The notes under the pieces are model-generated. The model saw only the letters and a program-made list of their open reading frames with translations, searched no databases and had not been told where the DNA came from. Made by a program: the position numbers and the translations under genes. From assembly GCA_021613535.1 (NCBI GenBank), contig CP075492.1, forward strand, positions 17,112,001 to 17,176,000: DNA of 64,000 bases, written 5' to 3'. How positions within the stretch are numbered: the stretch's first letter is position 1; each line of letters begins with the position of its first letter. Source of the stretch: Adineta vaga. Taxonomy: Eukaryota; Animalia; Rotifera. Below are positions 3,540 through 34,919 of this stretch, in pieces.

Positions 3540-3883
3540 GTTTTATTGAATAAAAATATTTGGAAATTATATTCAAATGTTCTAATTAAATGATTTCATT
3601 TGAATAGAGATTCCTATTTATTCAATGTTAAGATTAACCTTAAAGACAAGTGAATCTATCTAAAACACACCTTTAAAAGAAAAAATAAAAGGATTTATTG
3701 AAAATCTCTATGCAAATAATCAAAGATGACAAAATATCAGTTTGTTTTTAGGAAAAAAATCAATATAAATAAAAGAAATTAAATATTGATTTGATAAAAT
3801 CATGCATTGGAATTTAAGATTTTCTCAACATGATCTTCTGTAACGTAAAAAAAATATTTTAAATCATTTAATGATTAAATAAG

Positions 3884-4228: not shown

Positions 4229-7200
4229 AATGAGATTAAGAATCAGTATTCTTACATTTGGATCATCTATTAAAACTTATGGTTTAAAATTAAATCTTTT
4301 TCACACTGGTATTGAAGATGAATTAATTATAAAAAGCGAACGACGAACTACTCGTCTCTATTTATGTCTTCTTATTTTGTCAATTCTTCTTTTTAATTTT
4401 TATTATACATTTATACCTTATAAAAAAACATATATTCTTAAATCTCCAACATTAACTCATTATTTAAAATTGGAACAAGAATATTCATTAAAATGTCCAT
4501 GTAAAAGGATTGCAATTCGATATGAAGAATATGTTAAAATGAAACCTTTATTTCATCCGTTATGTGAACATTTATATAAACTTTATGAACAAACAATAAA
4601 TAAAACAATTTCAACACATATTCATCGTATTGCTGTTTTTCAATTTCAAACACTTCGTCAACTTTGTCAATTAACACAAAATATTCTTAATGAAAATCTT
4701 CAAATATTTTTACAAACAAATTTGATTCAAATTGAATTAATATCATTTGCAAATCTTGAAAAAAAAATGTTATTTTTAATAGAAAATTTTGTCAATTCAA
4801 CATCGAAAACATCTATGAGAACATTAAATTTCATTGAAAATAGAACTGAACAAAATTTATTAATGACTGGTGCTTCAATAACAAGTATTTTACCAAGAAA
4901 TCAATATCGTCAATTTGTTCAAGAAAATATTCCTTATGATGGAATGACATATACATTTCTCGATCAATCAACTTGTATTTGTTCAAGTTCAACAGTCAAT
5001 ACTTGTATAGGTTTATCAACATTTAATAATATTTCTATTTCTGGTTTTTATACAGGTTGTTATATGTTAAATGCACTTCTTCATTCCACATTAGAAATAC
5101 TTTTTAATCAAACATAATTTCATATTCTTATTCAATCATTACTTCAACAAATGTTTGTTATTCATTGGTCAAAAGAAATCTTTTTTGAAAATTATTTTAA
5201 TCAATGTTTACCTATTTCATGTCAATATACAATTATTCAACAAAATAATTTTTTATTTATTTTAACATTATTAATAAGTCAATTTGGTGGATTATCATTT
5301 GCATTGAAAAATATCACATCATTTTTAGTTATAACACTTTGGCCAATGATTTATAAATGGATAAAACAAAAGAAAACTTCGACTATACAAATTATTCAAA
5401 TAAATAATCGATTTAAACAATTTTTAATATTAATAAAAGAAAAATTAATTGAATTAAATTTCTTTTCAAGTTTTCCACCATCACACGATTTAATAATTCT
5501 TCGACAACAACGTTATACAACTCGATTCTATATTATTTTTCTTATCTTATCAATTCTTATTATAACAAGTTTAACATCAATTCAATCTGAAACAATTTAT
5601 AAAACAATTAAATTTCCAACATCAAATGAATTTCTTAATCTTTATAAAAAATATTCTCGAACATTAAATTGTCCATGTAATCAAACAGTATTTGATCAAA
5701 AATACATTTCTTATATAAAACCTGAATATCATGAAATCTGTTCAAGTTATTTGATTTCTTCAAATTGGATTCAAATGAAATTTGATCATTCTTCAAAAGT
5801 TCCATTATTAACAAATGATTCTCGATATCAATCAGAATTTCATTTTCAACTTCTTTCAACATTATGTCAAATGGCAAATGAAACAATTGAAGATTCAATT
5901 GAATTATTTAATCAAACAAAATTTCTTAGTAATAAATTATATCATCCTGAATTATTTCAAATACAAATGAATTTATTAATTGAACAATTAAAAAAAACAA
6001 TATCTGAATCATTTCAACGTATAATTGAAATAATAAAAATCAATTATGAAATTAATCAATTTATAACACCCAATGAATTCTTATTTTCGTACTACAGCAA
6101 CTATTGAAAAGAATGATTCAATCACGATTTCTTCATTTCAATATAAAAGATTAGATAAAAACGAATGTCTTTCCGATATGATTCTTCCTGATTTCTGTAT
6201 GTGTTTTCTTCAAGCATCATATCAATGTAGTCAAAAAACAATATTAAAAGAAATAAATGATAATTATTATACAATACCTGGAATGTTTCAAACATGGTTT
6301 CCATTTCAATCACTTCTTATATCAACATTAGAATGTTTTTATGATCAAATATGTCTTTCTCATATAATAAATTCATCATCATCAAATAATATAACAATTC
6401 TTAATAGTTTATTATTACCATCTGATAAGCATCGTCATGATCAAATTGAAACAATAGTTAAGAATGTTTTTATTCAATCATGGAAAATTTCAAGTTCATT
6501 TCAATCTTATTTTAATCAATGTAATCCATTAATATGTCAATATTCTTATCAAAATCGTGTTAATTTTATTTATATTATCACAACAATGATTGGAATTATT
6601 GGTGGAATTAATATTGTTTTACGTTTAGTTTTACCATTTATTATTCAATTAATTATGAAATATTTAAATGAACCAAGACAACATAATTCAACGAGAAAAA
6701 TAAGTAAAGAAAATAGTATTTTTACAATATCTCACGAACGGAAAGAGCTAGAGACCTGCGGTTTTCACCAATAGTCTCCGGCCTTGTATTGGACGTACAG
6801 TCGTGTGGAGGAAGACAATTTCAGACAATACATCGAAGAGGAAGCAAAAATATATGGCCACAGGGATAATTCATCACGCTGATTCCAATGATGATATTCG
6901 TTTTTAATTTTAAATGATTTTGGACGCAGGATGTAGTCTATTATCTTTATATGGGAGGGGTAAGAGAGGATAATACTCCATAACCGATACTGTGGAGTCG
7001 TTAAAATTAAAAACGGATATCATCATTGGAATCAGTGTGATGAATTATCCCTGTCGCCGCATATTGTTGGTTCCTCTCCGATGTATTGCTGCCAAGAAAC
7101 GATCTGATTGGACAGACAGTAGTTTTTAAGTTTTACCTTAGAACAGTTATTTACAATCGGAAATATTTAACCTACGATGATTTCATTGATTTTAGGATTG

Positions 7201-19365: not shown

Positions 19366-20653
19366 GTTCATCAATAAATGGAACGTTTCAGATAAGAAAA
19401 AAAGGAAGCAGAAAAAGTCTCGAAAATGATAATATATCAGATTGAACAGATTGATCTTCCGACATGATATGTCAGTGGATTACCTTTTTCCTATTCGTTT
19501 AGATTATAACAGAAAATTCTATTTTCAAATATCGGACGAAATCAAAGACTAAATTGCGAGAATTTTTTTATGTAAACAAAGACGTTGTTAATCTTTACTT
19601 ACTATTTTGTATCAAATCTTCAATATGAAATTAATCATAAAACGGTTTAAATTATAGAAATAATATAAAATAAATTTCTCAAAATTCAACTATGCAAATC
19701 TCTTGATTCAATATATATTTCACAATTTGTAATGGTTCAGATATTCAACATTGATATTATATTAAAATCGAGAAAATCTTTCGTCAATACATTTGATAAA
19801 AGGTATTTCATAACATTTAACATCAACTGTCTATGATATTCGATAATTCTTATTAATCAGTTTATCATTATTACCATATATTGAAATGAGAAGGATTTAG
19901 AGAATGAGTTTTTAGTTATTAATATAGTTTCAATAGAATATGGATTTTACATACAAAGTTATAAGATATCAATATTTATCAGTTGGTTTTAGTAACAAGT
20001 GAACTCGTATTAAATCTTGTTAAAATAATCTTTTGAAGAACTTTTATGAGCTGTGATGAAAAAATTAATTTTATTATTGAATTTTTTTTTGTTTCATTTT
20101 AACAAATATTAAATTAAAAACAGAAAATTCTACAAAATGTTTCATTTTATTCATTATCTTGATAAAAAGTATACGTTTTTTCCGGTGTTGCTTTAACTAA
20201 TAACGTTGTATATAGTATAATAAGATGAATACATTTTAAAAATCAAGAATAAGGATAATTTTATAAGGGTATCTATCTTTCTAATATATTCTCAAGAAAT
20301 GTTTTACTATGTTTCTTATTCACAAAGAAATTCATAATAAGAATATTCTTCTCATTATAATCGTCGTTAGTTCAAAATAAGACATTTATTTTCATAATGT
20401 TTATAGTAAATATAAATTGAACAACATACTTCAATCGTTTCCAACTGAAATTATTTATACATTCTTTTTATCCAGTTATAGATTAAATAATTTATTAGTA
20501 GAAAATCATCGTCATTGTGAAATTAAGGTTTATTAATAATTCATATGGATACGTGAAAAAACCAAAGAGAAAAGAAGAAATAGGAAATCTACTTACAGTC
20601 ACACCGTCATATTCAACTAAGGAAAAGAAGAAATTAAAAATCTATGTGCATTC

Positions 20654-20715
20654 ATCTTGAGGATGAGTGGGTGAGGCTTAAGAGTAAAGTCTAACCCACA
20701 CCCACACCCTAAAAT
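20654..20715. repeat. TGAGGG/TGTGGG hairpin element
   Basis: atcttgaggatgagtggg...cccacacccacaccctaaaat; a shorter copy follows at 21053-21086. Confidence 0.8.
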
Positions 20716-21818
20716 ATTTTCTCCCAGTTATTAATATGAAAAAAATTTGAAACGTATAGTTTACATATGGAAAAAAGCTCGTATTAATTTTCAATTTTTC
20801 ATATCTATTGTAATTACAGTCAAGAAAATATTATTCCCTCCTTGTCTCTAAAGTACGTAGTTTTCTAAGGATGGTTCCAGAAAATGAGTACTGGGGGTAA
20901 TAGTCGCCAGACTACTGTATTTTCTTACTAAATAAACGACCTATCGTCTTATAATAATACTCACAACATCAACCGCTAATCTAATCACAAGAGAGAAGAA
21001 AGGGTGAGCGGGTACATTTCTCACTAGTGTAAACATTTATAATTTTGTGACATGAGGGTGTGGGTTAACAAGAGACCCACACCCTAGCCAACACAAGTAC
21101 TTAAACAAACCGAGACAAAAATAACTCGAATATGGTGCTGACTTTTCTTACGTGCAAAATTCTTCGATTTTCATAATTTATAAGGAAAATTTTCGCAGGA
21201 AAAAAACCCGTAAAATTTCATATAAACTCAAAATGTTGTGAAACTTTATCAACTTGTGAGCCTGTCTGCATGGCTCTCGAGTGATTTATATCAAAAAGAA
21301 TAAAAAGGGAATCACTCTCCGTATACTGTGTCAGACACACACATATATACCGGGAAGAAAAAGAGAACAAAGGGGAAGAATGGTATCAGAGATAGCATTC
21401 TTTCACGAAACAAACAAAAGGGATGACTGTAACACTCCATGAATCAGAAGGATGAGGAGGAATGTATCCAGACGTGACATGGTAGAGAGGAAGAGAGAAG
21501 AAGAATAGCGAGAACACTCGTCATCGCTAACACAACTTATCTTACATTGACTCAAGTGTGCACACGAAGGAAAAATCCTTCATATATGTCATCATACGAA
21601 CAGGGAAAACTTCAATATACGTATTTCGGAATTGTCCATACTAGCAATAGTTACTACTGATTTACAAAGATTATACATACTTCAGATCGCGCTTGCTATT
21701 TATTATTTTACTAATTTCGACGAAACAAACCGCTAAAACTATTACATACTAATTAGCAAGGTAAGCATCAGACGGTCAATTTATTCATATTTTTATTTTC
21801 AATAGGTAAATTCAACAA

Positions 21819-22970
21819 ATGACAGGCGAAAAAGTTCAAAATTTATTCAAGATCATTGATGATTCGATTGCAACTGATAATGCATTCGAGAAAATCAATT
21901 CATTATTTGATGAAGTTTTAGTTTTATTAAATGAACTCGAAGTTGAAGATGAATCATCATATAATGCAGCTAAACATGAATATCATACAAAAAAATCTTC
22001 TTGTTTAAAATCATTTGGAAAAATAGAAGAATCTTTAAAAGAAGAAACATTAGCTATTCGATATGGATCAAAATTACCAAAAGCAATTCAACAAGAACCA
22101 ATAAATCCTTTGCTATTATCATTACCAATGGAAGATAATGATGATGATGAATTAACGATTTCAAAAGCGAAAGCATTTATTGAAAAAAGTTTTCAAGATT
22201 TGACACAACACAGATTAATTTCCAATCAGATAAGAAATGAATTAGAAAATTTACTTATTGATTATCTTCTTCCAAATGAAATTCTATCAGTTGAACAATA
22301 TGATAATTTAGAAAAATCATCTTCACAAATACATCTTATTGCAAAAACGTTTCACGATCAAATTACTCTTGATAATAATCTAGAACAAATTGTATCAAAC
22401 AATGAAATTTATTCTGAAGATCCAATAACAGAAATTTCATTTCTTCTCACATTATTTGATACATCAATTGATAAAGGTTTAAATGTATTATTAATTCAAA
22501 AGAAAATTTATTAAATGAATTAACACAAAATGGAACCATTTGCGATCGAGATTTAATTAAAAGATATACAAAAGAAGGACAAAAATTATGGGAAATTGCT
22601 CGAGATTATAGTCGAGCAAGAAATGCAAATTGGAATCAATTTGTTCATTTAAATGGAAATGAATTAAGAAATCGAACAGAAACTGAATTAAAGAAACTTC
22701 AAAAGATACATTCATTATTAGCTTATGAACAATATCGTGCAGCAGCATTAACACTTGGAATAGGAGGTACTGCAGAAGAACGTAGTGAATTAAGACGAAT
22801 GATGGCGATTACACTTTATACAGGTGAAGAATATTTACAAGCACAAATGTATACAATTGCTGCAATGCATATTCTATTGAATGATACGAATACAAATGAA
22901 ATTTATTCAAAAATAAACGGTTTACAAAAATTATTAGGAAAAATTCAAAGTACTCAACGTCAACCTACGA

Positions 22971-23001
<31 letters not shown>

Positions 23002-26000
23002 AGCATCGTTATCGTTATCGTCTTCAACTCAACTTGTTTCTGTTAATAATCAACAACCATCATCTTCACTGATATTAAAAGCTCAAATGCAAAACGAATT
23101 ACGATCTATTGTACTTCAACAATGTTTAGTTCGAGGTGAAGAAAAACAACTTGAAACATCAAAAGAATTAATCTTAGCTGCGAAAACAAAAGTTACTCAA
23201 TATAATTCTTTAACATTTGGAATGTTAACCACAACTGCTGGTGCTGCAGTTGCAACAGGTGCACAAGTATATCAGACAATATCAACAGGTTTATTATTAG
23301 GTTCAACAATTGGACCAGTTGGAATGGTTCTTGGAGTTACTGGAGGATTAATTATTATTGCTGGTAGTGTATTATTAACAAAGAAATCTTTTGATATTAC
23401 TAATAAACTTGGTGATGAACCAATTATACGTGATATACTTAATGAAAGATTATCAGAAGCAATGGATTATTGTAAACAACAAATGTATACGAAATTCTTA
23501 GAATCATTAGCTAGACCATATTGGGATGAGTCTTATCTAATCAGAATAGAAATTCATGGTGATTCTGTTGAAATTAAAATTGATTCTCAACATATTATAA
23601 ATCAATTATTAAAACATGAATTTCGTCCAGATGGTATTGCTTATTTATTAATATTACTTGGTGAAGCATTACTTAATAAACCAAAATTAAATGATAAAAA
23701 TACAAATCTACGACAACCAACACAATCAACATTTAATGAATTAGCATCAAGTTTATTTCGAGATGTTTTCAAGAAAAATGATAAATTACAAGAAAAAGCG
23801 AAACAATTAGATTCACAAGTTCAAAAAAAACATCTAGATAATTTAACATTAAATAAATTTGAATATTATTGGCGTTCAATGATATCATCAAAATATTCAT
23901 CGTATGTTTATTCAATACCTGAAGAATATTTTAAAGATGCATTAAAAACTCCATTTACAACTCGATTAGATGAATTAGGTGATATTGCTCGTTTAAATTA
24001 TGCAATTACACAAATAATTATTGGTGGTGTCGATAATTTAGATGAAAGTCAAGAAACAATTCTGGAAATTAAACGTAAACAAATTCTCACAGAAAATAAT
24101 CAATTTTTCAAAGTATCACAATTAACAATGCAAGCTATTGATGATTTAGTTATGGCATTTGGTCTTCAACCAAAATCTTTAGTTGATAATGATTTATTAG
24201 TTTTAGAGAATAAAGTTTTATTTGAAAATATCAATATTATGATGAATGGAAATGTTCCTATTAATTGTGAATCTGTTAAAAGTGTATCAAATGCATCAGA
24301 ACAATTAGAAGCTCTTTTTGTGAATTATGTAATATGAAAATTATTTTAACTCAAAAAGAATTTACTGAAAAAGTTAAAGATTTATTTACTAATGAATCAA
24401 TGAAAGATAAGATTCAATGTATGATGATAAATGATGGAATAGATAATATTAATAATTGGATTAATGAACATTTCTGTAAACAACAATGGATTTTATCTGA
24501 AATACATTTACCAATTCTATCGCATATATTTAACGTAGAAATTCATATTTGTTCTGTTGGAATTCATTCAAATTATGGACGAGTATTTGTTGAACATAGT
24601 AATCATACATTTGATTCATCGAGTATTTTTGTTGTATTGAATGATGAAAAGAATATAATTTGTTTATTCAAAATATGTGAATTAAAATTAAATTATTTAC
24701 TTGATCAATTACATTTAGTTCAAGATATTCAATCAAAAATTCGTTTATATCATCAAATAGTTTTATATTATCGTTTGAAAGCTGAATATTATGAAACGAT
24801 ACATCGATTAAAAGCTTTACCAATGTGGAATAGTGCTAAAGAATATTACTTAGATATCATTCAATTAGATAAAAATGATTTAAAAGCATCACTTGGTTAT
24901 GGACGTTCTCTTATTATGCTTAGTAAATGGAAAAAAGCAACAGAATTCTTACATGAAATCCTTCAATTGCATGAAGATTCGAATGAAGGATGGTATTTAT
25001 TAGGTTTAGCATATCGAAAATTACGAATCTATGATAAAGCAGAATATGAAATTCGAAAATCACTTTCGAAATCATCAGATTATAAAGATGCTATCAATGA
25101 ATTGCGAATAATTGAAACTTTACAAACCGAAAAAATTGATGATCGTCTGAAAGTTTATGATCGTATGACAACGAGTGATACTCGTCGGAATGAAAATTCT
25201 TCAAATTTTAATATTTTATCGATTGATGGAGGTGGCATTCGAGGTTTAATGCCAGCTGTATGGTTAGCTGAAATTGAACGTCGTACAAATCGTTCAGCCG
25301 CATCGATGTTTCATATGATGGCTGGAACATCAACAGGTGCGATTATTGCAGCTGGTCTATCTACTCCAAATCTTGAGTTTTCAAAGCTCGTTATCGAGCT
25401 GCTGATATTGTTAAACTTTATGTTAGTCATTCAAATGAAGTTTTCAAAAAGCCATCAGAAAGATTTTATAATATGCGACGTTATTTATCACAAGAAGCAA
25501 AATATATTGATGATGGTCGAAAAAACTTATTTGGAGAATATTTTGATCATACACTTTTATCACAAGTATTAACTGAATTAGTTATTCCAACTGTGAAAAC
25601 TGATAAACAAATAACACATTTATTTAATCGTTATGATTGTCGTCATAGTCATGCACGTGATTATGAATTACAAGATATTCTTATGTGTACAACAGCAGCA
25701 CCAACTTATTTTTCATCATATCACTTAGATAATTGTCAATATATTGATGGTGGCGTTCAAATGAATAATCCAGTTATGGCTGCATATGATGAAGCAATAC
25801 GATATGGTAAATCAAAAGAAGATATTTTTATTTTATCACTTGGTACAGGTGATTATGTACCAAACCCGTTACATCCAAATGCGAATCGACATTTATTATT
25901 CTATGCAATGAATGTTCAACAAGTTTTGAATATTATTTGTGACGGACCACAATATAATATGGATGTTCATATGTTATCGGTTTTAAATAAAGAAAAATAT

Positions 26001-26171
26001 CAACGTTGGCAATTATGGTTCGAAGAACCAATTGAATTAGATGCGTATAAAGAGCCATTTATTGAAATCTTATTTGATAAAGCACGAGCATTTTTTGAAG
26101 AAATGGAAGGTTATGATAATGATAAACGTTTAGGACTTTTGCTCGATCGATTAAAAGATGATGCACATTAA
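21819..26171 (+). pseudogene. Large helical/Gly-rich TM + TPR + patatin-like phospholipase gene, frameshifted
   Basis: DGGGIRG, GTSTG, AAPTYF, DGG patatin motifs; TPRs at 24800-25110; frameshifts at about 22510, 24335 and 25380 with no intron signals. Confidence 0.8.
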
Positions 26172-26239
26172 TTTCAATAGTTTTCCAACTTTGATTTATA
26201 TTGATTTTTTGTTTTTGTAATCTTATAATAAAATTTTAA

Positions 26240-26292
26240 AAGTGTGGGTGTGAGTAAGGATTATATTCTTCTCTGCACCCATACCCACACCC
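26240..26292. repeat. TGAGGG/TGTGGG hairpin element
   Basis: gtgtgggtgtgagt...acccatacccacaccc, about 70 bp after the patatin stop. Confidence 0.8.
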
Positions 26293-26683
26293 AGGTTATA
26301 TAATAATTAAAATTGATCGAATTAAAAGGGTGAGGGGTGAAGATGGATAAGGACAATACTCATACCTGTTAGTTAAGAAACTTGTTTTATTAGATTGAAG
26401 AAAAAACATAAGTTACAATTTTCTGAATAATTTCTGTCATGCATTTTTTTAATCTACTTGGTATCCAGTAACATCATATGCAAAGCACGTTAAAGGACGT
26501 GTGATATATATTATTTTGACGCTAATATTACTTCAGAACTCGTTCATGATTTTCATTCTATTAGTTGATTTACTCATATATTTTAGAAAAAAATCACGAG
26601 AAAGTAGAAGACAAGAAGCAGTATTAAAAAATACTTGTCAAACTAAAATTTCCATGAACAATAAGTAAAAGAGCATTATATCT

Positions 26684-29600
26684 ATGATTGCTCTAGTCGT
26701 TATACTCTTGGTTATTAATCATTCTGCAGGTAAAAACAAAAATTGATCAGCTTTTTTCTACTTAATCATATGATAGTCTTAATAAAAATATGCATTTACT
26801 ATTATACGAAAGAAGCTTTCAGCACTTAAAAGCACTCCTCCTCACAAATGATTTCCTAGTTTTTATTATTGCTTTGCGCTATAATTTTCAGGATTGAGTG
26901 ACCTTAGTGAGATATGTGTTTTTGGTAAAGGTTTCAACAACTAAATCTCATCAGCCGAATGTGGGTAAAGATATTGTCCCTATGCATCCTCATCCACATT
27001 TCTCGATTATGTCAAAAATGATTAGAAAATTGTCTTCTTCTGTATAGGTGTGTCTTACAATCAGCCCAAATTTAGTTCATGTGCATTTTGGGACTCAAAT
27101 GCAACTACATTTGCTGATGGCTACACAATTGGGCAACAATCATCTGGTATTTTTATCAACGTAAAAAACAATATTTATGTAACCGATGGAGAACATGGTC
27201 GTATTCTCATATGGGATAATGAAACATCGACTCCAACTAAAATTATTAGTGAAGATTTGATCAAACCATGGAGTCTCTTTGTCACGACACAAGATGATAT
27301 TCTTGTTGATAATGGTAATTTTAACAATCGAATCGACAAATGGACAGTGAATACAACGACTCATAAATTTGTGATGAATGTGAATGGTTCTTGTACAGGA
27401 TTATTTGTTAATATCAATAATAATCTTTATTGTTCGTTGGTAAATCATCATCGCGTTGTTAGATTTACACTCGACAACAATCTTGCTCTACCAATGATTG
27501 TCGCGGGTACTGGTTGTCCTGGCCCAATAGCTAACATGCTCGATCATCCACATGGCATCTTTGTCGACATTGGTTTCAACTTATACGTGGCAGATTCATA
27601 TAACAATCGAATTCAACAACTTTTGCCAAATCAAATGAATGCAATCACTGTAGTTGGCTTTGGAGCAGCCGTGTATTTCATACTTAATAGACCGACATGT
27701 ATTGTAGTCGGTGTTGATGGTGATCTTTTTATTGTAGATAGTCACAACCATCGAATCGTTCGATCGACAATACATGGAGTTCAGTGTTTAGTTGGATGCT
27801 CAGGTAAAAGTGGAGCCATGTCAAGTCAATTGCACAATCCACAAACAATGGCTTTTGACAGTAATGGTAATATATTTGTCACCGATTTGAACAATCACAG
27901 AATTCAAAAATTTATTCTCACTATTAACTCATGCGGTATGTCTGTTTCCTTTCGATTGGAAGATGAATATAGCGATTGTTTTTTTACGAAAGTATGGAAG
28001 TGTATTATTAAAAGTATCGATGGATATGTTAGTACAGATATTAAATGAGTGAAATTTCAACACTCACCTAATTTTCGAAAATAGATAACGATAGAAATAT
28101 TTAATTTGCCAATCATATCAAGATTATTACTTCAATCATGTGTTTAGCTGGGTAAAAGTTTTAGAAAAAAATAGAAAAAAAAAGAAATATGATTATTATC
28201 ATCAAACGTACATTAAAATTTTCACTTCAAGACGGAGTTAGATAGTTTTTAGTTACTTTTTTCAACTTATATCAAAAACATTTCCTGATCAAACTGAACT
28301 GAATTAGATGAAAGAAAAAGACGTACGAAATAATCTATTGATAAGTACAACAATTGAAAAAGAATAAAAGTTCAGTGGGTAAACACCAAAATAAAATGCA
28401 TAATTGTTCATTTGCTCTCCCCCTGATTACGTCACTGATCAGCAGTTGTTGTACGATTATATATATTCGATCAAAAAATTTATAATGTTTTAATGCATAG
28501 ACATTTTTTTCTATGCGCATTGAAATGCGTTAAAAAAGGCTTGTGTGATTATGAATTCGTCTATTGCGATCTCACTCGATACCTATTATACTTAACATAG
28601 AACTATATGTGATTGTCAAACAATATGCTAAATTAAAATATCAATAGAAACAAATCACACATTTATAAATACTCTTGTGATATTTTCTATATAATTCTAG
28701 AAACTACGACGACGACGAAAATGACTACTATCACTACGATAATTACTGCTACGACGACGAAAACGACTACTAGCACTACGACAATTACTGCTACGACGAC
28801 GAAAATGACTACAAAATTTACAACGACACCATGTGAGAAGCAATCTTTTTACATTTCTGAATTGCTTTCATTCATTATAGTTTTACATGCATAATAGTGT
28901 TATAAAATTTCTAGATTAATTGAGTATAGCCATTAAGAATAACGAATAACTAGTTTGCTTAAATCCACGAAAAATGATTCCAGATTTATGTGACAGAACT
29001 AAGCACTTATCACTTCATCTTCTATATTTTTGGGATTTCTAATATATAGAATAGTATTTGTTTGTGTATATAGCGTGTTATTTCGGTAAAGATTATGTTA
29101 ATCTCGTCGAAGGTGGACGACGTCAAATTAGTCAATTAAAAGTCGGAGATCGAGTCTGGACATTAAGTCATGATGGCGAACATCTAATCGAAGATGAAAT
29201 CATGTTCATAGGACATGCTGTACCTACTATTCCAAGTTTGTATAATTCTCTATTCTGATTAGTTTTCTAAATAAATTATTTTAATTAAGCTTATTTTTAT
29301 ACATTCACAACAATTGAAGGACATACAATTAGTTTAACAGATGCACATTATATAGTCGTTGCTACCGATGATGAAATAAACATGGAAATTGTTCATGCTT
29401 CAAAAGTAACACTTAACCATAAATTAATAATGGCTGGTCGTCGAATGAGTCTTGAAAAAATAGTCTTTTCTATACGTATTGGTTATTATTCTCCAATAAC
29501 ACTTAGTGGATATTTACTTGTAAATAATATCTCAACATCAGTTTATAGTGATATGTAATTATAAAACAAATTCATATTTTAATACTATACTGTTTTGTTT

Positions 29601-29881
29601 TCTTTAGTTTTCAGGCTTCACACGATTTCCTTCATAAAATAGTTGCTCCATGTAGAATTTATTATCGAATAGCGAGATGGTTATTCGGTAATGATTACAA
29701 TCCATTGGGAAATGGTATTGAAAATGATATTCATCCCATAGGAACATTTGTTATAAATAATTATAAAAAAATTGAATTATTTTTCGTCATAATTCCTTTT
29801 ATAATACCAATTACAATTATGATTTTAATTATTTATTTAACTGAATATTTTTTTCATATAAAATTATTTATTCTTATTTAA
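26684..29881 (+). CDS. Signal peptide + NHL propeller + Thr-rich stalk + Hint/Hog autoprocessing domain + C-terminal TM
   Basis: Exons 26684-26729, 27048-27935, 28701-28832, 29074-29235, 29290-29554, 29608-29881, all GT-AG and in frame. S|CYF, LKVGDRV, SLTDAHY, GYYSPITLSGYLLVNNISTSVYS, HDFLH..P, IHP. Confidence 0.88.
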
Positions 29882-31665
29882 AAAAGATACGTTGTCCCTT
29901 TCATTGGTAACATGGGCAGTTAAATTGTCCGACATGATATTTTTTTGTAACTTCTCTATTTGTCAATAAAAATATTTTGTTTCGATCACAGCACTATATT
30001 TTTATCTTTTTAGTTTTTCCACTTCAATACATTTGTAATTTTTATGCCGTTCTTGGTTAACATACAAAAGTAATTGAATACTACGATGAAGCATTAAAGT
30101 TGTATAAGGATTCTCTTTCTCACAAGTGCGAGGATGTGAGGGTGGACATTTTCTGATTAAAATCGATAGAGCTCGATTTGGGACCAGTGACGGGATCGGT
30201 TCGATTCGCAAAAGAAAATGATAAATATAATTTATATATTTTGTATGTCTATAACAATTGGTCAGAAGACAATCAGTCCGACGATAATTGTTCGTAGTCA
30301 AGTAATCATATAGAGAAAGTTGAATAAGAGAAAAAAAATTAATTAATAACAAATATAAGAACAAATATATTCTTTGTGTTTTCTAATTATGTAAGAGTTG
30401 AAAATGAGAAAATATGACAAGTTATGTAAACGTTTATTTCGATAAAAATCTTATGTTTGAAATGAATGATGATTAGTATTCAATCAGTGCTAGAACATGA
30501 ATATAATTTTCTGCTTTTTTTTACATCTGTTTCACAATAGTTGATTACTTCTATAAAAATGCGATTAAGTGCTATATAATCAATTTATTGTTTACGATCT
30601 CTCATATCGTTTTCTGTGCTGTTCCTTTATTCTAAGCCTAATTAAATTTTTAGATTCTCACATAATGTATCTCTTTACGTTAATCAAGCTATAGTAGTAT
30701 GACGATTCAAAAGATGTTTCTTAATTATTGATAAGCTTACGACAAACTAGTTGTCGTATTAATTGACCTATGAGTAATTTGTCAACTAGTATTTCAAGGC
30801 AATATACCTATGATTTACAAGAACACAAAGAATTTCATTTCTCTCTAGAATTCGCTTGTCGAATATATTCAAGTGCGGACGGACAGTCAACTTTTAAGAC
30901 TGCTGAAAAGATATTCTAATATCTTTGCGAGCTTGGTCAGTTTCTGTTGACAGCACTTTTAAAATAAAGTTTTTATAAATAATACATGGTTAGGGATTAT
31001 ATATTTAATATATATTTTTAACTAGTTAAAAAAGTACAGTAGAACCTCGCTTATCTGAACACCGCGCGGTTCCAACCAAAATGTTCACAATGACGAGATG
31101 ATCATAATGGATAGGATGATTGATAAAATAAATCTAAACACAATTTTTTACCAGTTCCTGTTCTATCTGAATATAACTTAATCATTTTATTCAATAAATT
31201 ATTATTATTTATCATGAAATACGGGCCCAGATAATGTGTATTCTTTTTGATATCTGAAGAATAAACCACTCGTAATTTTTCTCATTTATTTCTTGAGTAA
31301 GGTCGTTTGTTGATTTTCGTTTCATTCTTTTGCTCTTGTTACATTCATAATCGTCAAGATATTCATTTTTTCTTTTAAGAATATTCGACAAGTAACGCTC
31401 GTCGTGCCGACTCACTTAACCCTCGGCTGTGAAAGACATATATTCTTTTAATGTCCCAATAGCGAGACGAATTGACTTAGCAACTTTACATATGAGGAAA
31501 CGGTTGAAGTGCTTTTACTAAAGTATTTATTAACTTTCGAAAACAAAATACCCGATTTTTCTAATAAAATCAAAGAGGATAAAACGTATTTTTCATTGGG
31601 ATCTTACAACAATATCATGAGTACTAGGAGTTACGTGCAAAATTAAACAAAACAAATAAAGATCG

Positions 31666-33068
31666 TCAGAAGCATTGAGCAAAGCGTAGTTGTGTTTCTG
31701 TGTATAGTTTATCTAATCTTTCCGTCTCCGTAAGTTGCGATTTTGCTGGCTTCATCAATAAAGTTTTGTAATCGAAATGTCTTAAAATGATTAAGTCAGT
31801 CAGACGTTTCACACGTGACAATGGAACATAAATTGCGGCAATATCATCAGTTCTGCTTGGTAGTTTTAAATCAATGACAACATTACTCAAAGTTTGACCT
31901 TGACTTTTATGTGTCGTGATAGCAAATGTAGGCACAAGTGGTAATGCACGTCGCTTAATCGATAGAATTGTTTTCGAATGTGATTTTGGTTTCTTATCTT
32001 TTGGTAGCATATCAGCAATATTAATACGAAATGTTTGTTCCATTAATGGTATCGGGATGAGATTTGATTGAAGTTGTTCGAAATTGCATTCAATTTTTGA
32101 CCGAACGATTTCAATGATGGCGTACAATGGTTTACGGATGTATCGTGTATTGTTGGGGAATGTTTCTGAGATACTGTCTGTTGACACAGAATCTTCTTCA
32201 TACACAAGTTGTCGAAAGATCCCATTCATTCCATTGATAAGACCCAGTTCTATAGCAATATTTTGTGTTAAAATAACAGGCATTCCAGGAACTAATGGCA
32301 GAAGACCAGGTAAATGCTATGTTCTGCTATCAGATAATTCTAACAACTTTTTAACTAATTTTGGATCTTCGATTGATTTGCCTTTACAACTATCTTGAGC
32401 AGTGCACACCATAAGTGCTTGACCCACTTCTACTGCCTTATGAATTGGTGCCTTATTGTTTAGTCTTGTCCGTACTTCGTTTCGGAACACGAGAATGGGC
32501 GCCTAAAAAGACGAAGATATGTAAGTATTCGGAAGAAAAAGAATTCTTTACTTTATTCCAAGGTGGATCACATAGAGAATTTACTGACGGTTGTCCTACA
32601 ACTCGTGTTAACAGTGACCCATAATCGTCACGATTACATTGTCCATGACGAAGTCGATCGAGAAGTTGAAGATATCGAGAATCTTCCGTTCGCATTTGTT
32701 GAGTGAGTTTTACAACGCAGTTGATTTGGAGAATTAGAGAACGTGCAACGCGTTGTTGAATTTCCTTCTCATTGAGCGATTTGTCTGATTTTTTTTTCGA
32801 TGGTAAAGAGAAATCGGTATATAATGGTGCATCGTATATGGGTCGGTATTGCAAATAATCACCAAAGAAAATAACGTTTACACCACCGAACGGACTTTGA
32901 GCATCGACATGTTTTGCAGAGCACATTATTCGATTAAGTTTTGCTAATAAATGTAAACCAACCATACTCATTTCATCGATTAACAGATATTCGACTAGTC
33001 TCCACTCTTTTTCAAGTTTTGAATCACCTGCTTTGATGATTCGTGGTTGTCTCGAATCGCGTTGTTCA
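31666..33068 (-). mobile_element. Helitron/Helentron Rep-helicase fragment (PIF1-like C-terminus), 5'-truncated
   Basis: IDEMSMV, FGG..FGDYLQYRP, QQMR, NG.NG, AITTHKSQGQTL, YVPLSRV; one intron near 32504-32551. Confidence 0.85.
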
Positions 33069-33200
33069 CCTAAAAATGAACGTTTGCGACTGTTTAAAAA
33101 AAATGTTTTTTTGACCTTTGACCCTGACACAAACAGACAGACAGACAGGTAGACAAACTATTTTTTCATATGACCCTCCTTACAGTCGAGGGAATAGGTG
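33069..33200. mobile_element. DINE/Helentron-like terminus at the helicase breakpoint
   Basis: (ACAG)n microsatellite followed by a short hairpin ccctccttacagtcgaggg. Confidence 0.45.
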
Positions 33201-34919
33201 ATTTATTACGAACTAGTTCTTTACTTCGTCAAAATTTCGATTTTGATTTGAGTATTGATTACTATGTAATAATGTAATTCTAAACATGCTTTATGATTGA
33301 ATAGATGGAGCCCCATTCGAAATACGTATCGTGTGATGCTTTGAATTTCTGATCTCTCTTTTATAATTGAAATAAGCCATTTGAAAAATTTCTTAAGAAA
33401 AGACGAAACGCATCGTGATAGCTTGTTACTCACCCCACACCCTTACTCTCTCAGTCTGTATTCATCACACAAATATTTATCTTCTTCGATACATTTAAAC
33501 ACTTGATTCAAATGTCGATTCATACGACGATCTTTCGAAGACTATGTTTTGTTCTTGCAACCATTTGAAGAGAGAGTAATATTGATTCAGTTTTACAATT
33601 CAATAGGCAATTTAAAGCCAAAGTATAGTTTCATTGATGAATATTAAAGATTGACTCAGCCAATAATAGAGAACGAGGCCCAACACCGCGAAAAAAAAAC
33701 GTTTTGATGACAGGAACGGTAAAAATTGAGGAGGAGTTGTGCAATTCGAGTGATTCACGAGACTGACGTATAAGTAGTTGAAGAAATCATCTCTCTCACC
33801 ACATATATTTGACAGAAAGTTAAATAGAGAAAGGTAAGCATTACTTTCTGTTTTTCTTTTTTCGAATACAAGTTCGTGACGCTGACGACTTACGAAATAA
33901 TTCAAAGGACGTGATTTGGCTTATTAGAAGCTCGTTTTTACGTAAGATACTTTCAGTTAACTGTGGATCTGTAATGTCTAATAATGTTCCATTAGAGATT
34001 CTATCATCTAGTGATTGGATACTGAGTAGAATACTTGATAATTTCGATACTTATTACTAATTGACATAAGTAGTACTTTTTTAGTAAAAAATATAGTGAA
34101 ATCAGTAAACAATTTATTCTGGTTCATCTTTATATTATATTCTCAAAACTCGTTGATTTTTAATTTCGATCAGTTCCATCGATACCATTTTATAGTGTCT
34201 AGTTTGAAGATTTGTTTCATGAACAAAAACTGATAATTTTTATTAAAGATCGTTCTATACTAAACAATGTAACATATGTCTATGCTGCAATAAAACCAAT
34301 AATAAAATTAAAAAAATAACAAATGATTATAAATGATTCAGAAATTCCATACTAATCATCATCAAAATGGATTGAGTTACAAATGTCGCTTAACTATGAA
34401 TATTAAGTGTATTCTACCCGTATATATTTCCTGAGAAAATCATGTTAGAGTTCAATTGCGCGTCTAAAGCATAAAATTTTGCGCACTGTTATAAACCTCT
34501 CTCATTTTATAAGTAGCTAATTATATCTATAAATCCCATTCCTCACATACTTTAGTTTGGTATGAAATTCGCGAGCTGTGCTATTAAAGATTATAGTAGT
34601 GATCTTGAGGAATAATGTTATTACTAGTATTGTACATCCAAATACCAGTATAAATATATCAGATGTATAGTCAGGCCTTTTCATAGGGAAAATACCCAAA
34701 AGATACCATTTTACTTGCTGTACTTGTTTTCATTCAATGACAGTATGGGATCCTAGTGAGTAATTATAAAAATTTCCTAGTGGGTCAAACTACGTCTTTA
34801 TAAAAAGATGAATATCTAGAAGTTGCTCTCACTGCGAGAAGGAGACTGCAGAAGAAGCTTTTTTCATGTTATGTTACTATTGTTTTGTATTTAGAGACAA
34901 CTACATCAAATCCGATATA

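What the first reader, a model, noticed from the sequence alone, without database searches (positions are those of the whole stretch)
26684..29881. Hedgehog-type self-cleaving protein carrying an NHL propeller instead of Hedge
Seen: an intact six-exon ORF that the ORF track shows only in pieces. The Hint starts at Ser|Cys-Tyr-Phe, keeps the block-B TxxH (LTDAH) and the GYYSP.T.SG.L.VN motif, and is followed by an SRR-like region (HDFLH..P..IHP) and a TM tail. Established: Hog domains cleave before this Cys and can attach a sterol to the N-terminal product. Differences from Hh: His where Hh has the Asp near position 46 (MFIGH, as in nematode Hh-related proteins) and Val for the second Cys (SVYS). 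Inference: a membrane-anchored precursor that releases or lipidates a mucin-stalked NHL propeller. I do not know this architecture from described Hh-related families.
Basis: partly seen in the sequence, partly recalled or inferred. Interest (0 to 1): 0.85.

Follow-up and report, generated by a model that had tools for sequence, protein, structure and literature searches.

The report
Rotifer NHL propeller fused to Hog
A bdelloid rotifer (Adineta vaga) gene joins the exons of a secreted six-bladed NHL propeller and a threonine-rich stalk to a hedgehog-type self-cleaving domain with a membrane tail. This combination is undescribed, but it looks like a young, species-specific exon-shuffling product, and I found no evidence that it is expressed or that it cleaves.

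Summary
Window 26684-29881 (+) carries an intact six-exon, 588-codon frame. It encodes a signal peptide, a six-bladed NHL propeller, a Thr-rich stalk, the site Ser|Cys-Tyr-Phe, a hedgehog-type Hint, an SRR/ARR-like helical region and a C-terminal membrane helix. Cys1 and the TxxH motif (LTDAH) are kept. His lies at the column of Drosophila Asp46, and Val replaces Cys143.

The genome is Adineta vaga, chromosome C3. Both halves come from large, intron-phase-compatible families:
- an NHL-exon family with 897 first-look candidates, of which 133 were scored and matched;
- at least 54 six-frame Hint matches, with no Hedge domain found.

The 5' half (signal exon, NHL exon, long intron, Thr exon) matches the structure of the NHL paralog L033, which continues into another domain. 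The 3' half matches a bdelloid Hog subfamily that normally starts with a cytosolic tail, a membrane anchor and a Thr stalk. I infer that the junction lies in the 241-nt intron.

The only other NHL+Hint locus found is a recent 8.7-kb duplicate 1.55 Mb away, and its Hint is decayed. No RNA evidence could be obtained, so cleavage and lipidation are inferences.

Verdict: a new cargo variant of a known kind (Hog proteins). It is real at the genomic level and of moderate interest. Other notes of this scan had already flagged the rotifer Hog and NHL families elsewhere in this genome.

The parts
26684..26729 (+). Exon 1: start codon and a 15-residue signal peptide, ending in a phase-1 donor (GCAG|GTAAAA)
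   Evidence: Sequence. Hydrophobic core ALVVILLVI, mean hydropathy 3.87. Homologous exon of the same length with the same donor in the NHL paralog L033. Used as exon 1 in the annotated duplicate P0077.
26730..27047 (+). Intron 1 (318 nt). It contains a possible 39-nt mini-exon at 26892-26930, which I rejected.
   Evidence: P0077 splices exon 1 directly to the NHL exon. The resulting 'signal peptide then SYNQPKF' matches the family norm.
27048..27935 (+). Exon 2: complete six-bladed NHL beta-propeller, a symmetric phase 1-1 exon
   Evidence: Pfam NHL 2e-22. AlphaFold2 pLDDT 92.4, pTM 0.91. Foldseek matches Pizza6, PknD, TRIM2/71 and Thin NHL propellers. 133 scored paralogous exons of 897 candidates in the genome. 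GT donor conserved at the same phase-1 position in seven of the eight distinct loci read there; L036 has AGTATG.
27936..28700 (+). Intron 2 (765 nt). It contains a 250-nt element (28191-28437) that has a 76-80% identical copy on chromosome C1.
   Evidence: The read-through frame is not conserved in the duplicate. L033 has a 629-nt intron at the same place.
28701..28832 (+). Exon 3: Thr-rich (67% Thr+Ser) mucin-like stalk, phase 1-1; varies by an in-frame 42-nt repeat unit between copies
   Evidence: The 42-nt gap appears in the duplicate and in public DNA contigs. L033 has a Thr exon in the same position and phase, with the same ...CC(A/C) T|GT end.
28833..29073 (+). Intron 3 (241 nt): inferred junction between the NHL-family part and the Hog-family part
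   Evidence: Upstream of it the structure matches L033, which goes on to a different domain. Downstream of it the structure matches the Hog subfamily, whose corresponding introns are about 55-80 nt.
29074..29235 (+). Exon 4: split-codon Ser, then Cys1-Tyr-Phe (predicted cleavage site), the N-terminal third of Hint, and His at the general-base column
   Evidence: Pfam Hint positions 13-59. Alignments to 1AT0/6TYY. Family alignment A2.
29290..29554 (+). Exon 5: Hint core with T69xxH72 (LTDAH), GYYSPITLSGYLLVNN, and Val at the Cys143 column
   Evidence: Pfam Hint positions 67-161, 46.9 bits. Alignment to 1AT0/6TYY. The split codon at the exon 4/5 junction gives Thr, as in relatives (PTIP-T-YFYTF).
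29608..29881 (+). Exon 6: SRR/ARR-like region (SHDFLHKIVAPCRIYY ... DIHP), a C-terminal membrane helix, and the stop codon
   Evidence: Aligns with relatives along its whole length. The profile aligns this region to Drosophila Hh up to residue 431. The model of relative P0002 shows helices 147-171 and 185-232 after the Hint. Hydropathy 3.09 over 19 residues. Ten paralogous copies in the genome.
29965..29970 (+). AATAAA, 84 nt after the stop: a possible polyadenylation signal
   Evidence: Pattern only.
21075..29804 (.). Extent of the recent segmental duplication shared with C3:18689983-18698538; it ends inside exon 6
   Evidence: blastn shows four collinear pieces of 92.8-97.1% identity between 21075 and 29804, with short unaligned gaps.

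Best explanation
This is a real but evolutionarily young chimeric gene of Adineta vaga.

Origin (inferred). The first three exons (signal peptide, NHL propeller, Thr-rich stalk) belong to a member of the very large bdelloid family of secreted NHL-propeller genes. The last three exons belong to a member of the bdelloid 'membrane anchor, Thr stalk, Hog, membrane tail' family. All the introns concerned are phase 1. A rearrangement inside what is now the 241-nt intron therefore produced an in-frame gene in which the propeller replaces the usual N-terminal anchor.

Predicted product (shown at sequence level). A type I membrane precursor of 588 residues: signal peptide, NHL propeller, O-glycosylatable stalk, Ser|Cys, Hint, helical SRR/ARR, membrane helix.

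Predicted mechanism (inferred from the Hh mechanism). In the secretory pathway, Cys1 attacks the Ser-Cys peptide bond, helped by Thr69 and His72, to give a thioester. A nucleophile then resolves the thioester and frees the propeller-stalk from the membrane-held Hog part. If the nucleophile is a sterol or another lipid activated by the His at the Asp46 column, the propeller ends up lipid-tethered. If it is water, the propeller is shed.

My odds: about 0.75 that the six exons form one transcript, about 0.6 that the protein is made and cleaves itself, and about 0.25 that a sterol-like adduct is attached.
For: One frame:
- Six exons with GT..AG introns and matching phases, no stop.

Domains:
- NHL at 2e-22 and Hint in two collinear pieces; 72.1 bits in the genome search.
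- The NHL exon folds as a six-bladed propeller, pLDDT 92.
- The Hog domain of a 60%-identical relative folds as Hint plus helices. Its best Foldseek matches are 6TYY and 1AT0, with TM 0.90 and rmsd 1.5 A.

Catalytic set:
- Cys1 and T69xxH72 are present. His aligns to Asp46. The best PDB match of the family profile is the active D46H mutant 6TYY.
- D303H keeps activity in Drosophila Hh (review PMC9163320).

The 5' half is an established gene structure:
- Paralog L033 has the same 46-nt signal exon and donor, the same NHL exon, a 629-nt intron, and a Thr exon ending in the same phase.
- DNA similarity between the two loci is confined to the exons.
- The GT donor after the NHL exon is conserved in seven of the eight distinct paralogous loci read there.

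The 3' half:
- About ten A. vaga paralogs and relatives in Adineta and Rotaria share the three exons, their intron positions and the split-codon residues.
- Their Thr exons are phase 1-1.
- Hog exon 4 begins at an acceptor directly before Cys1, so it needs an upstream exon.
- Nothing resembling the N-terminal regions of the twelve Hog relatives tested was found in window 20000-34000.

Independent gene model:
- NCBI's model for the duplicate locus (I4U23_016779, P0077) joins NHL and Hint through the same splice sites.

The window copy is the complete one:
- The duplicate, only 3-4% diverged, already has LTDAD, a 1-nt deletion and no membrane tail.
Against: - No transcript evidence. None of the nine runs of this species guessed to be RNA held a measurable share of the stretch's words (0.00). 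The four runs that did hold it are DNA, with contigs running through the introns.
- Between the two copies, exons are no better conserved than introns. dN/dS is 0.45 for the NHL exon and 0.4-1.1 for the Hint exons.
- Polarised changes fall on both copies. Constraint on the window copy since the duplication is therefore not demonstrated.
- No ortholog with this architecture was seen in other bdelloids.
- Cys143, reported to form a branched intermediate in Hh (title of PMC12054796, listed), is Val here.
- The residue before the scissile bond is Ser, not Gly.
- Introns of 765 and 241 nt are long beside the 53-54-nt introns in the same gene.
Confidence: 0.6

Rival explanations
1. The locus is a neutral by-product of rearrangement in a shuffling-prone region. 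The frame is still open only because the fusion is young. It is not expressed at a meaningful level and is on its way to the state of its decayed duplicate.
For: - The sister copy is already broken in three ways.
- Exon and intron identity are similar, and dN/dS is 0.4-1.1.
- The window copy carries derived amino-acid changes too.
- The runs of this species guessed to be RNA held 0.00 of the words.
- No ortholog with this architecture was found.
Against: - 588 codons are open with all catalytic residues intact, while the duplicate lost them at only 3-4% divergence.
- Derived changes in the window's Hint are conservative (I to V, I to M, N to D).
- The duplicate's defects partly follow from the duplication breakpoint inside exon 6, so its decay says little about the parent copy.
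- The RNA rows are guesses, and the tool states that a 0.00 share is 'no proof of absence'.
Confidence: 0.25
2. These are two transcription units. The first is an NHL-plus-stalk gene that terminates in or after the Thr exon. The second is a 5'-truncated Hog remnant, or a Hog gene using a cryptic first exon in one of the long introns. On this reading the one-gene model is an artefact of compatible phases.
For: - Introns of 765 and 241 nt are unusual here.
- Intron 2 holds a conserved element (28191-28437). It has an ATG followed by a hydrophobic stretch, and a copy elsewhere has a good GTAAAT donor after it.
- Tandem 'propeller gene then Hog gene' pairs do exist, for example at L050.
- Gene predictors can fuse neighbours.
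Against: - The Thr exon ends in a phase-1 donor with no stop. In L033 the same exon continues into further coding exons.
- The only in-phase donor after the intronic ATG is a weak GTTGTT; the others create TAA with the Thr exon (read).
- Hog exon 4 starts at an acceptor, so it cannot be a first exon.
- No family-type N-terminal exon was found nearby.
Confidence: 0.1
3. The protein is made, but the Hint does not cleave. Without Cys143 and Asp46 it serves as a structural or binding module, and the product stays an intact type I membrane NHL receptor.
For: Val at the Cys143 column, His instead of Asp at the general-base column, and Ser at position -1.
Against: - Cys1, Thr69 and His72, the residues needed for the first step, are conserved across the rotifer subfamily aligned in A2. 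The row for P0018 begins one residue after Cys1 only because of how I cut it; the protein has that Cys.
- D46H Hh is active (PMC9163320).
- Loss of the motif-J Cys is common in Hog proteins of other eukaryotes (PMC2362128).
Confidence: 0.05

Closest known systems
Hedgehog C-terminal autoprocessing domain (Hh-C / Hog: Hint plus SRR; PDB 1AT0, 6TYY, 6TD6)
   Same: - Matches Pfam PF01079.
- Cys1 at the domain start and T69xxH72.
- The Hint fold of a 60%-identical relative superposes on 1AT0/6TYY at TM 0.90.
- The helical region after the Hint aligns to the Hh H..x-A-P-x-R motif.
   Different: - The cargo is an NHL propeller plus a Thr stalk, not the Hedge signalling domain. No Hedge domain was found anywhere in the genome (that search has no positive control).
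- His instead of Asp46, Val instead of Cys143, and Ser instead of Gly before the scissile bond.
- A membrane helix follows the SRR-like region.
Bdelloid 'membrane anchor, Thr stalk, Hog, membrane tail' proteins (e.g. CAF2144924.1 Rotaria magnacalcarata = P0002; CAF1484815.1 Adineta ricciae = P0004; A. vaga I4U23_001329 = P0016)
   Same: - The three Hog exons are 45-71% identical, with the same intron positions.
- The same His column, STSV(Y/F) motif, SRR-like motifs and C-terminal membrane helix.
- A Thr-rich stretch directly before Cys1.
   Different: Those proteins begin with a cytosolic region and a signal-anchor helix and carry no folded cargo. Here that part is replaced by a cleavable signal peptide and an NHL propeller.
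Nematode Hh-related proteins (Warthog, Groundhog, Quahog) and choanoflagellate Hoglet (Burglin 2008, PMC2362128)
   Same: - A Hog domain behind a non-Hedge, secreted N-terminal part.
- Thr-rich stretches occur in Hoglet and in Xiphinema Thog.
- Trichinella Hog proteins have His at the same column.
- A lineage with an expanded Hog family and, apparently, no Hedge.
   Different: The N-terminal domains (Wart, Ground, Qua, cellulose-binding-like) are unrelated to NHL. NHL is not mentioned in that survey (0 occurrences). No C-terminal membrane helix is described there.
Bdelloid secreted NHL-propeller family (e.g. A. ricciae NHL+D8C protein P0139, Rotaria socialis NHL-Thr-NHL protein P0258, A. vaga paralog L033)
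   Same: Signal peptide followed by 'SYNQPKF', a 295-residue propeller in one phase 1-1 exon, then a Thr-rich linker, then a variable C-terminal module.
   Different: Here the variable C-terminal module is a Hog domain. Among the 120 best of 1178 NHL hits, only the duplicate locus carries Hint.

Membership tests
Hedgehog-type Hint/Hog autoprocessing domain (PF01079) | Significant match to the Hint module profile over its length | tested here: met
   Exon 5 alone scores 46.9 bits (cut-off 29.7) and exon 4 scores 28.5 bits; the two are collinear, positions 13-59 and 67-161. The six-frame hit scores 72.1 bits. The family profile hits 6TYY, 6TD6 and 1AT0 at 1e-18.
Hedgehog-type Hint/Hog autoprocessing domain (PF01079) | Nucleophilic Cys as the first residue of the domain | tested here: met
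   Exon 4 begins CG|TGT TAT TTC, giving Ser|Cys-Tyr-Phe. The Cys aligns to Cys1 (Cys258) of Drosophila Hh.
Hedgehog-type Hint/Hog autoprocessing domain (PF01079) | Block B Thr69-x-x-His72 | tested here: met
   LTDAH aligns to VTPAH of 1AT0. It is invariant in relatives except that two have Ser for Thr. It is mutated to LTDAD in the decayed duplicate.
Hedgehog-type Hint/Hog autoprocessing domain (PF01079) | Asp46 (D303) general base for sterol transfer | tested here: not met
   His occupies the aligned column. The column alternates between His and Asp among Hog proteins, with Tyr in one (P0016). The D303H mutant is active (PMC9163320). The chemistry may therefore be retained, but the defining Asp is absent.
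Hedgehog-type Hint/Hog autoprocessing domain (PF01079) | Cys143 (motif J, SCY) | tested here: not met
   The window has STSVYS where Hh has ASCYA. The column holds Val (Thr in one relative, P0013) across the rotifer subfamily; the more distant relative P0031 keeps Cys.
Hedgehog-type Hint/Hog autoprocessing domain (PF01079) | Sterol/adduct recognition region after the Hint | tested here: inconclusive
   The family profile aligns through H..x-A-P-x-R to Drosophila Hh residue 431. Relatives match PF01079 to position 211 of 213. The model of a relative shows helix-loop-helix. The window's exon 6 alone gives no Pfam hit and was judged only through alignment A2.
Hedgehog-type Hint/Hog autoprocessing domain (PF01079) | Autoproteolysis, with or without a lipid adduct | not testable with these tools
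   Needs expression and biochemistry.
Hedgehog proper | N-terminal Hedge signalling domain (PF01085) | tested here: not met
   The N-terminal exons hit only NHL-type families. There was no PF01085 match in six frames of the whole genome (that search has no positive control).
NHL-repeat six-bladed beta-propeller | NHL repeats forming a closed six-bladed propeller | tested here: met
   Pfam NHL 2e-22 with four stretches. AlphaFold2 pLDDT 92.4, pTM 0.91, with about 24 strands. Foldseek matches Pizza6/PknD and TRIM NHL domains at E down to 4e-17.
Bdelloid anchor-stalk-Hog subfamily | N-terminal cytosolic region plus signal-anchor helix before the Thr stalk | tested here: not met
   tblastn of twelve relatives against window 20000-34000 finds only the Hog exons. 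The window gene starts with a cleavable-type signal peptide and the NHL exon.
Bdelloid anchor-stalk-Hog subfamily | Three Hog exons with shared intron positions and a C-terminal membrane helix | tested here: met

The most novel reading that the evidence does not exclude
In bdelloid rotifers the Hog domain may be a free-standing 'plug-in' exon cassette that can be spliced behind any secreted module. Here it would turn a member of the hypervariable NHL recognition family into a self-releasing or lipid-tethered surface receptor. That would be a use of hedgehog-type autoprocessing for display or shedding of a recognition propeller, and not for a morphogen, in an animal that seems to lack Hedgehog itself.
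Probability: 0.25. Interest if true: 0.65.

Novelty: new variant of a known kind. Interest (0 to 1): 0.45.

Why it matters
Hog domains are known to process Hedge, a few nematode-specific domains and some protist N-termini. A folded beta-propeller as cargo has not been described in what I could search.

If the protein is made and cleaves, three things follow. First, the Hog module tolerates large unrelated cargo in a natural setting. Second, there would be a natural His-for-Asp46, Cys143-less enzyme to compare with the engineered D46H Hh. Third, two bdelloid gene expansions (NHL propellers and Hog proteins) would be linked through phase-1 exon shuffling.

The locus is also a datable example of new-gene formation. 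The parent structures of both halves are still in the genome, and a sister copy is decaying.

Its weight is limited. It is a single species-specific gene without expression evidence.

Tried and rejected
1. A seventh mini-exon (26892-26930) that also keeps the frame. I rejected it because the annotated duplicate skips it and the family norm is signal peptide directly followed by SYNQPKF.
2. Read-through of the NHL exon to the stop at 28046-28048 as the true end of an NHL-only gene. I rejected it because the tail is frameshifted between the two copies. Seven of the eight distinct paralogous loci read there have a GT donor exactly at that position.
3. A cryptic first exon for a separate Hog gene inside the 765-nt intron (ATG at 28396). 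The only in-phase donor is weak; the others give a stop.
4. A search for the usual Hog-family N-terminal exon, or for the L033-type C-terminal domain, near the locus. Neither was found.
5. RNA evidence. Their 'variants' are mostly the paralog, namely the 42-nt gap and the 1-nt deletion at 29455.
6. An orthologous locus in a metagenome contig (P0079, 75% identical NHL, 8973-nt contig). No DNA was available; the called neighbours show no Hint.
7. More sequence downstream of L033.
8. A tree of the 87-residue Hint exon, to date the fusion. It was unresolved around the window sequence.
9. The ESM Atlas. It returned only NHL clusters from rotifers and none with Hint.
10. Bacterial polymorphic-toxin Hint as an alternative origin. 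I did not pursue it, because the match is to the Hh-type profile with SRR motifs and the closest relatives are all rotifer Hog proteins.
Full report
METHOD NOTE

The references were window:27050-27934, 28703-28831, 29076-29234, 29292-29552 and 29609-29878. That step is left out. Where a continuous protein was needed, I used database proteins by id: P0077 (the annotated duplicate), P0002, P0004 and others.

1. WHAT IS THERE

The window is Adineta vaga chromosome C3:17112001-17176000, from an assembly of six contigs and 100.8 Mb. NCBI names the 95%-identical protein P0077 'I4U23_016779 [Adineta vaga]', on a contig of the same length as C3.

On the + strand, six exons form one open frame of 1767 nt:

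| Exon | Coordinates | Length |
|---|---|---|
| 1 | 26684-26729 | 46 nt |
| 2 | 27048-27935 | 888 nt |
| 3 | 28701-28832 | 132 nt |
| 4 | 29074-29235 | 162 nt |
| 5 | 29290-29554 | 265 nt |
| 6 | 29608-29881 | 274 nt |

The introns are 318, 765, 241, 54 and 53 nt. All are GT..AG, with phases 1,1,1,1,2.

- Exon 1 is a 15-residue signal peptide.
- Exon 2 hits Pfam NHL at 2e-22. With an alignment of 42 homologs it folds as a six-bladed propeller, pLDDT 92.4 and pTM 0.91. Its best structural matches are Pizza6, PknD and TRIM NHL domains.
- Exon 3 is 67% Thr+Ser.
- Exons 4 and 5 hit the Hh-type Hint profile PF01079 collinearly, at positions 13-59 and 67-161.
- Exon 6 has no Pfam hit by itself. It aligns along its length with the C-terminal regions of rotifer Hog proteins. 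It ends in a strongly hydrophobic 19-residue stretch.

2. RESIDUE-LEVEL CLAIMS

A gapless phmmer alignment of exon 4 to Drosophila Hh-C17 (1AT0) puts Cys at position 1, with Gly46 and His47 at the Asp46 site. A profile built from 16 family sequences introduces a one-residue gap in Hh. It then aligns the family His to Asp46. Its best PDB match is 6TYY, the engineered D46H mutant.

The column alternates between His and Asp among Hog proteins in the library, with Tyr in one (P0016). It is His in Trichinella Hog proteins.

LTDAH aligns to T69xxH72, and STSVYS aligns to ASC143YA. The family profile continues past the Hint into the Hh region H-W-G-L-A-P-M-R, up to Drosophila residue 431. This corresponds to SHDFLHKIVAPCRIYY in exon 6.

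The Hog part of relative P0002 (about 60% identical) folds as a Hint beta-structure followed by helices at 147-171 and 185-232. Mean pLDDT is 85.9.

3. CONTEXT: TWO LARGE FAMILIES

The genome has at least 54 six-frame Hint matches. I estimate these as some 35-40 loci. There is no match to the Hedge domain PF01085. That search has no positive control among its control genomes, so absence is not proven.

The NHL exon has 133 scored matches out of 897 first-look candidates, mostly 40-58% identical and almost all as single open exons of about 295 codons.

The closest Hog relatives are 55-71% identical in exon 5. They come from Rotaria, Adineta steineri, A. ricciae and A. vaga itself. Their architecture is a cytosolic N-terminus, a membrane helix, a long Thr/Ser stalk, Cys-Hint, an SRR-like region and a C-terminal membrane helix. 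Only Hint, or Hint plus low-complexity hits, appears in Pfam for them. About ten A. vaga loci share the window's three Hog exons with the same intron positions.

4. WHERE THE TWO HALVES MEET

The closest NHL paralog apart from the duplicate is L033 (C3:3.33 Mb; 71% amino-acid and 77% nucleotide identity). It has:
- the same 46-nt signal exon, ending GCAG|GTAAA;
- the same NHL exon;
- a 629-nt intron;
- a 78-nt Thr exon that ends, like the window's, in ...CC(A/C) T|GT, in phase 1.

It then continues into a 114-codon exon with no Pfam match. DNA similarity between L033 and the window is confined to the exons plus 30-40 nt of flank. So exons 1-3 and the long intron 2 are an inherited NHL-gene structure. 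They are not an accident of this locus.

Among the eleven NHL loci fetched, I read the base right after the NHL exon in the seven that lie on the + strand of their locus. Six of those seven show a GT donor at the same phase-1 position; L036 has AGTATG instead. L033, read after reverse-complementing, makes seven of eight distinct loci.

On the Hog side, the annotated A. vaga paralogs P0016 and P0013 have small Thr-rich exons in phase 1-1 directly before the exon that starts with the split codon and Cys1. Their introns are about 55-80 nt.

The split-codon residues at the window's junctions fit the family: PTIP-T-YFYTF at exon 4/5 and SD-I-FQASHDF at exon 5/6.

I therefore place the chimeric junction in the 241-nt intron 3. 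This is an inference. Upstream of it the gene is an L033-type NHL gene. Downstream of it the gene is a Hog-family gene whose own anchor exons are gone (no trace). The NHL gene's original downstream domain is also gone (no trace).

5. THE DUPLICATE

A segment covering window 21075-29804 is repeated at C3:18689983-18698538, in four collinear pieces that are 92.8-97.1% identical. It includes the upstream TPR-patatin gene. It ends inside exon 6, so the copy lacks the membrane helix. The copy also has LTDAD instead of LTDAH, a 1-nt deletion in exon 5 and a 42-nt in-frame gap in the Thr exon.

NCBI annotates the copy as a 452-residue protein that joins NHL and Hint through the same splice sites as my model. 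It stops at the frameshift (P0077). Because exon 6 of the window aligns with other family members through its membrane helix, the window copy is the complete, parental form.

Identity between the copies is similar in exons (96-98%) and introns (92.5-100%). dN/dS is 0.45 for the NHL exon and 0.4-1.1 for the Hint exons. Outgroup polarisation assigns amino-acid changes to both copies. The damaging ones (His to Asp, Leu to Pro, the frameshift) fall on the duplicate. The Hint changes on the window copy are conservative. This is compatible with constraint on the window copy but does not prove it.

6. IS THE ARCHITECTURE KNOWN ELSEWHERE?

- A search with P0077 (length range 249-791 residues) lists 1178 NHL proteins at E<=1e-30. 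Among the best 120, only P0077 itself carries PF01079.
- A search restricted to its Hint part finds only Hint-only proteins besides P0077.
- A reading of the whole 1.84-billion representative library with exon 5 gives 76 hits. I scanned 20 proteins with Pfam: 18 of these hits plus two cluster members. None has NHL. An A. steineri model has FG-GAP repeats and EGF before the Hint, but with a membrane helix in between, which may be a fused model.
- The ESM Atlas shows only NHL-only rotifer clusters.
- The window's own protein never appears in these tools. The tools say that records of the window's genome may be left out.
- Burglin's survey of Hog proteins does not mention NHL or rotifers. Full-text searches for rotifer or Adineta with Hog, Hint or NHL found nothing relevant.
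- Other notes of this scan, on other parts of the same genome, had already flagged the anchor-stalk-Hog family, Hog genes with small Cys-rich cargo, and modular NHL exons joined at the same phase-1 junction. I reached the family-level statements independently through.

7. EXPRESSION

Nine runs of the species that are guessed to be RNA held 0.00 of the sampled words. The four holders are DNA: their contigs cover the introns, and the only joint is the 42-nt repeat-unit gap. Transcription and splicing therefore remain unverified. The near-zero share is weak negative evidence.

8. MECHANISM

Shown:
- the order of domains;
- the presence of the residues needed for the N-to-S acyl shift (Cys1, Thr69, His72);
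- a His at the general-base column, which is functional in engineered Drosophila Hh and widens substrate tolerance (PMC9163320);
- an SRR-like helical region;
- a C-terminal membrane helix.

Inferred:
- The precursor is a type I membrane protein with the propeller, stalk and Hog domain on the lumenal or extracellular side.
- It cleaves between Ser and Cys.
- The Hog part stays in the membrane.
- The propeller-stalk is either shed (by hydrolysis) or tethered through an esterified sterol-like lipid.

The lack of Cys143 argues that the route differs in detail from Hh. A 2025 paper reports that this residue forms a branched intermediate in Hh. I saw only its title, PMC12054796, listed.

9. VERDICT

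The thing is a new cargo variant of the Hog kind. It arose by phase-1 exon shuffling between two expanded bdelloid families, it is apparently specific to A. vaga, and it lacks expression or activity data. Interest is moderate (0.45).

Noticed in passing
whole genome G000: A. vaga shows at least 54 six-frame matches to the Hh-type Hint profile. It shows none to the Hedge signalling domain PF01085. That resembles the C. elegans situation: many Hog proteins and no Hedgehog. The Hedge search has no positive control.
   Followed up: partly
window 28191-28437 and G000:C1:14564018-14564298 (-) = L061:4519-4799: A 250-nt AT-rich element inside the 765-nt intron is 76-80% identical to a stretch about 1 kb downstream of an unrelated NHL exon on chromosome C1. 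It contains TTACGTCA and an ATG followed by a hydrophobic stretch. In the C1 copy this runs into a GTAAAT donor. It could be a promoter plus first exon, or a small mobile element. It is unexplained.
   Followed up: partly
window 21075-29804 and G000:C3:18689983-18698538: A recent 8.7-kb intrachromosomal duplication, 1.55 Mb apart, in four collinear pieces of 92.8-97.1% identity. It copies the TPR-patatin gene (98.7% identical) together with the NHL-Hog gene. One breakpoint lies inside the last exon of the NHL-Hog gene.
   Followed up: yes
window 24334-26171 (+): The upstream neighbour is a two-exon gene with TPR repeats and a patatin-like phospholipase domain (Pfam 2.5e-08 and 1.7e-12).
   Followed up: partly
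L033 (G000:C3:3329662-3333549), minus strand; exon at L033:387-728: The closest intact NHL paralog continues after its Thr exon into a 114-codon exon beginning CTTRVTFDD. That exon has no Pfam match. It is an uncharacterised C-terminal module of the NHL family.
   Followed up: partly
L050 (G000:C3:5279500-5289499), minus strand, 4618-5998 and 1800-3559: A gene for a membrane anchor, a Thr stretch and a divergent NHL-type propeller (Pfam NHL 5.5e-07) lies about 1 kb upstream of, and in tandem with, a typical anchor-stalk-Hog gene. This kind of neighbourhood could give rise to fusions like the one in the window.
   Followed up: partly
proteins P0018 / P0283 (Adineta steineri CAF1035788.1, CAF3751714.1): Gene models with FG-GAP repeats, a membrane helix, a Thr stretch, EGF and then Hog. 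The topology looks inconsistent, so these may be fused models, or they may be another propeller-plus-Hog combination.
   Followed up: no
window 28706-28749: A 42-nt (14-codon) in-frame repeat-unit difference in the Thr-rich exon. It is seen in the duplicate and in public DNA contigs of the species.
   Followed up: partly
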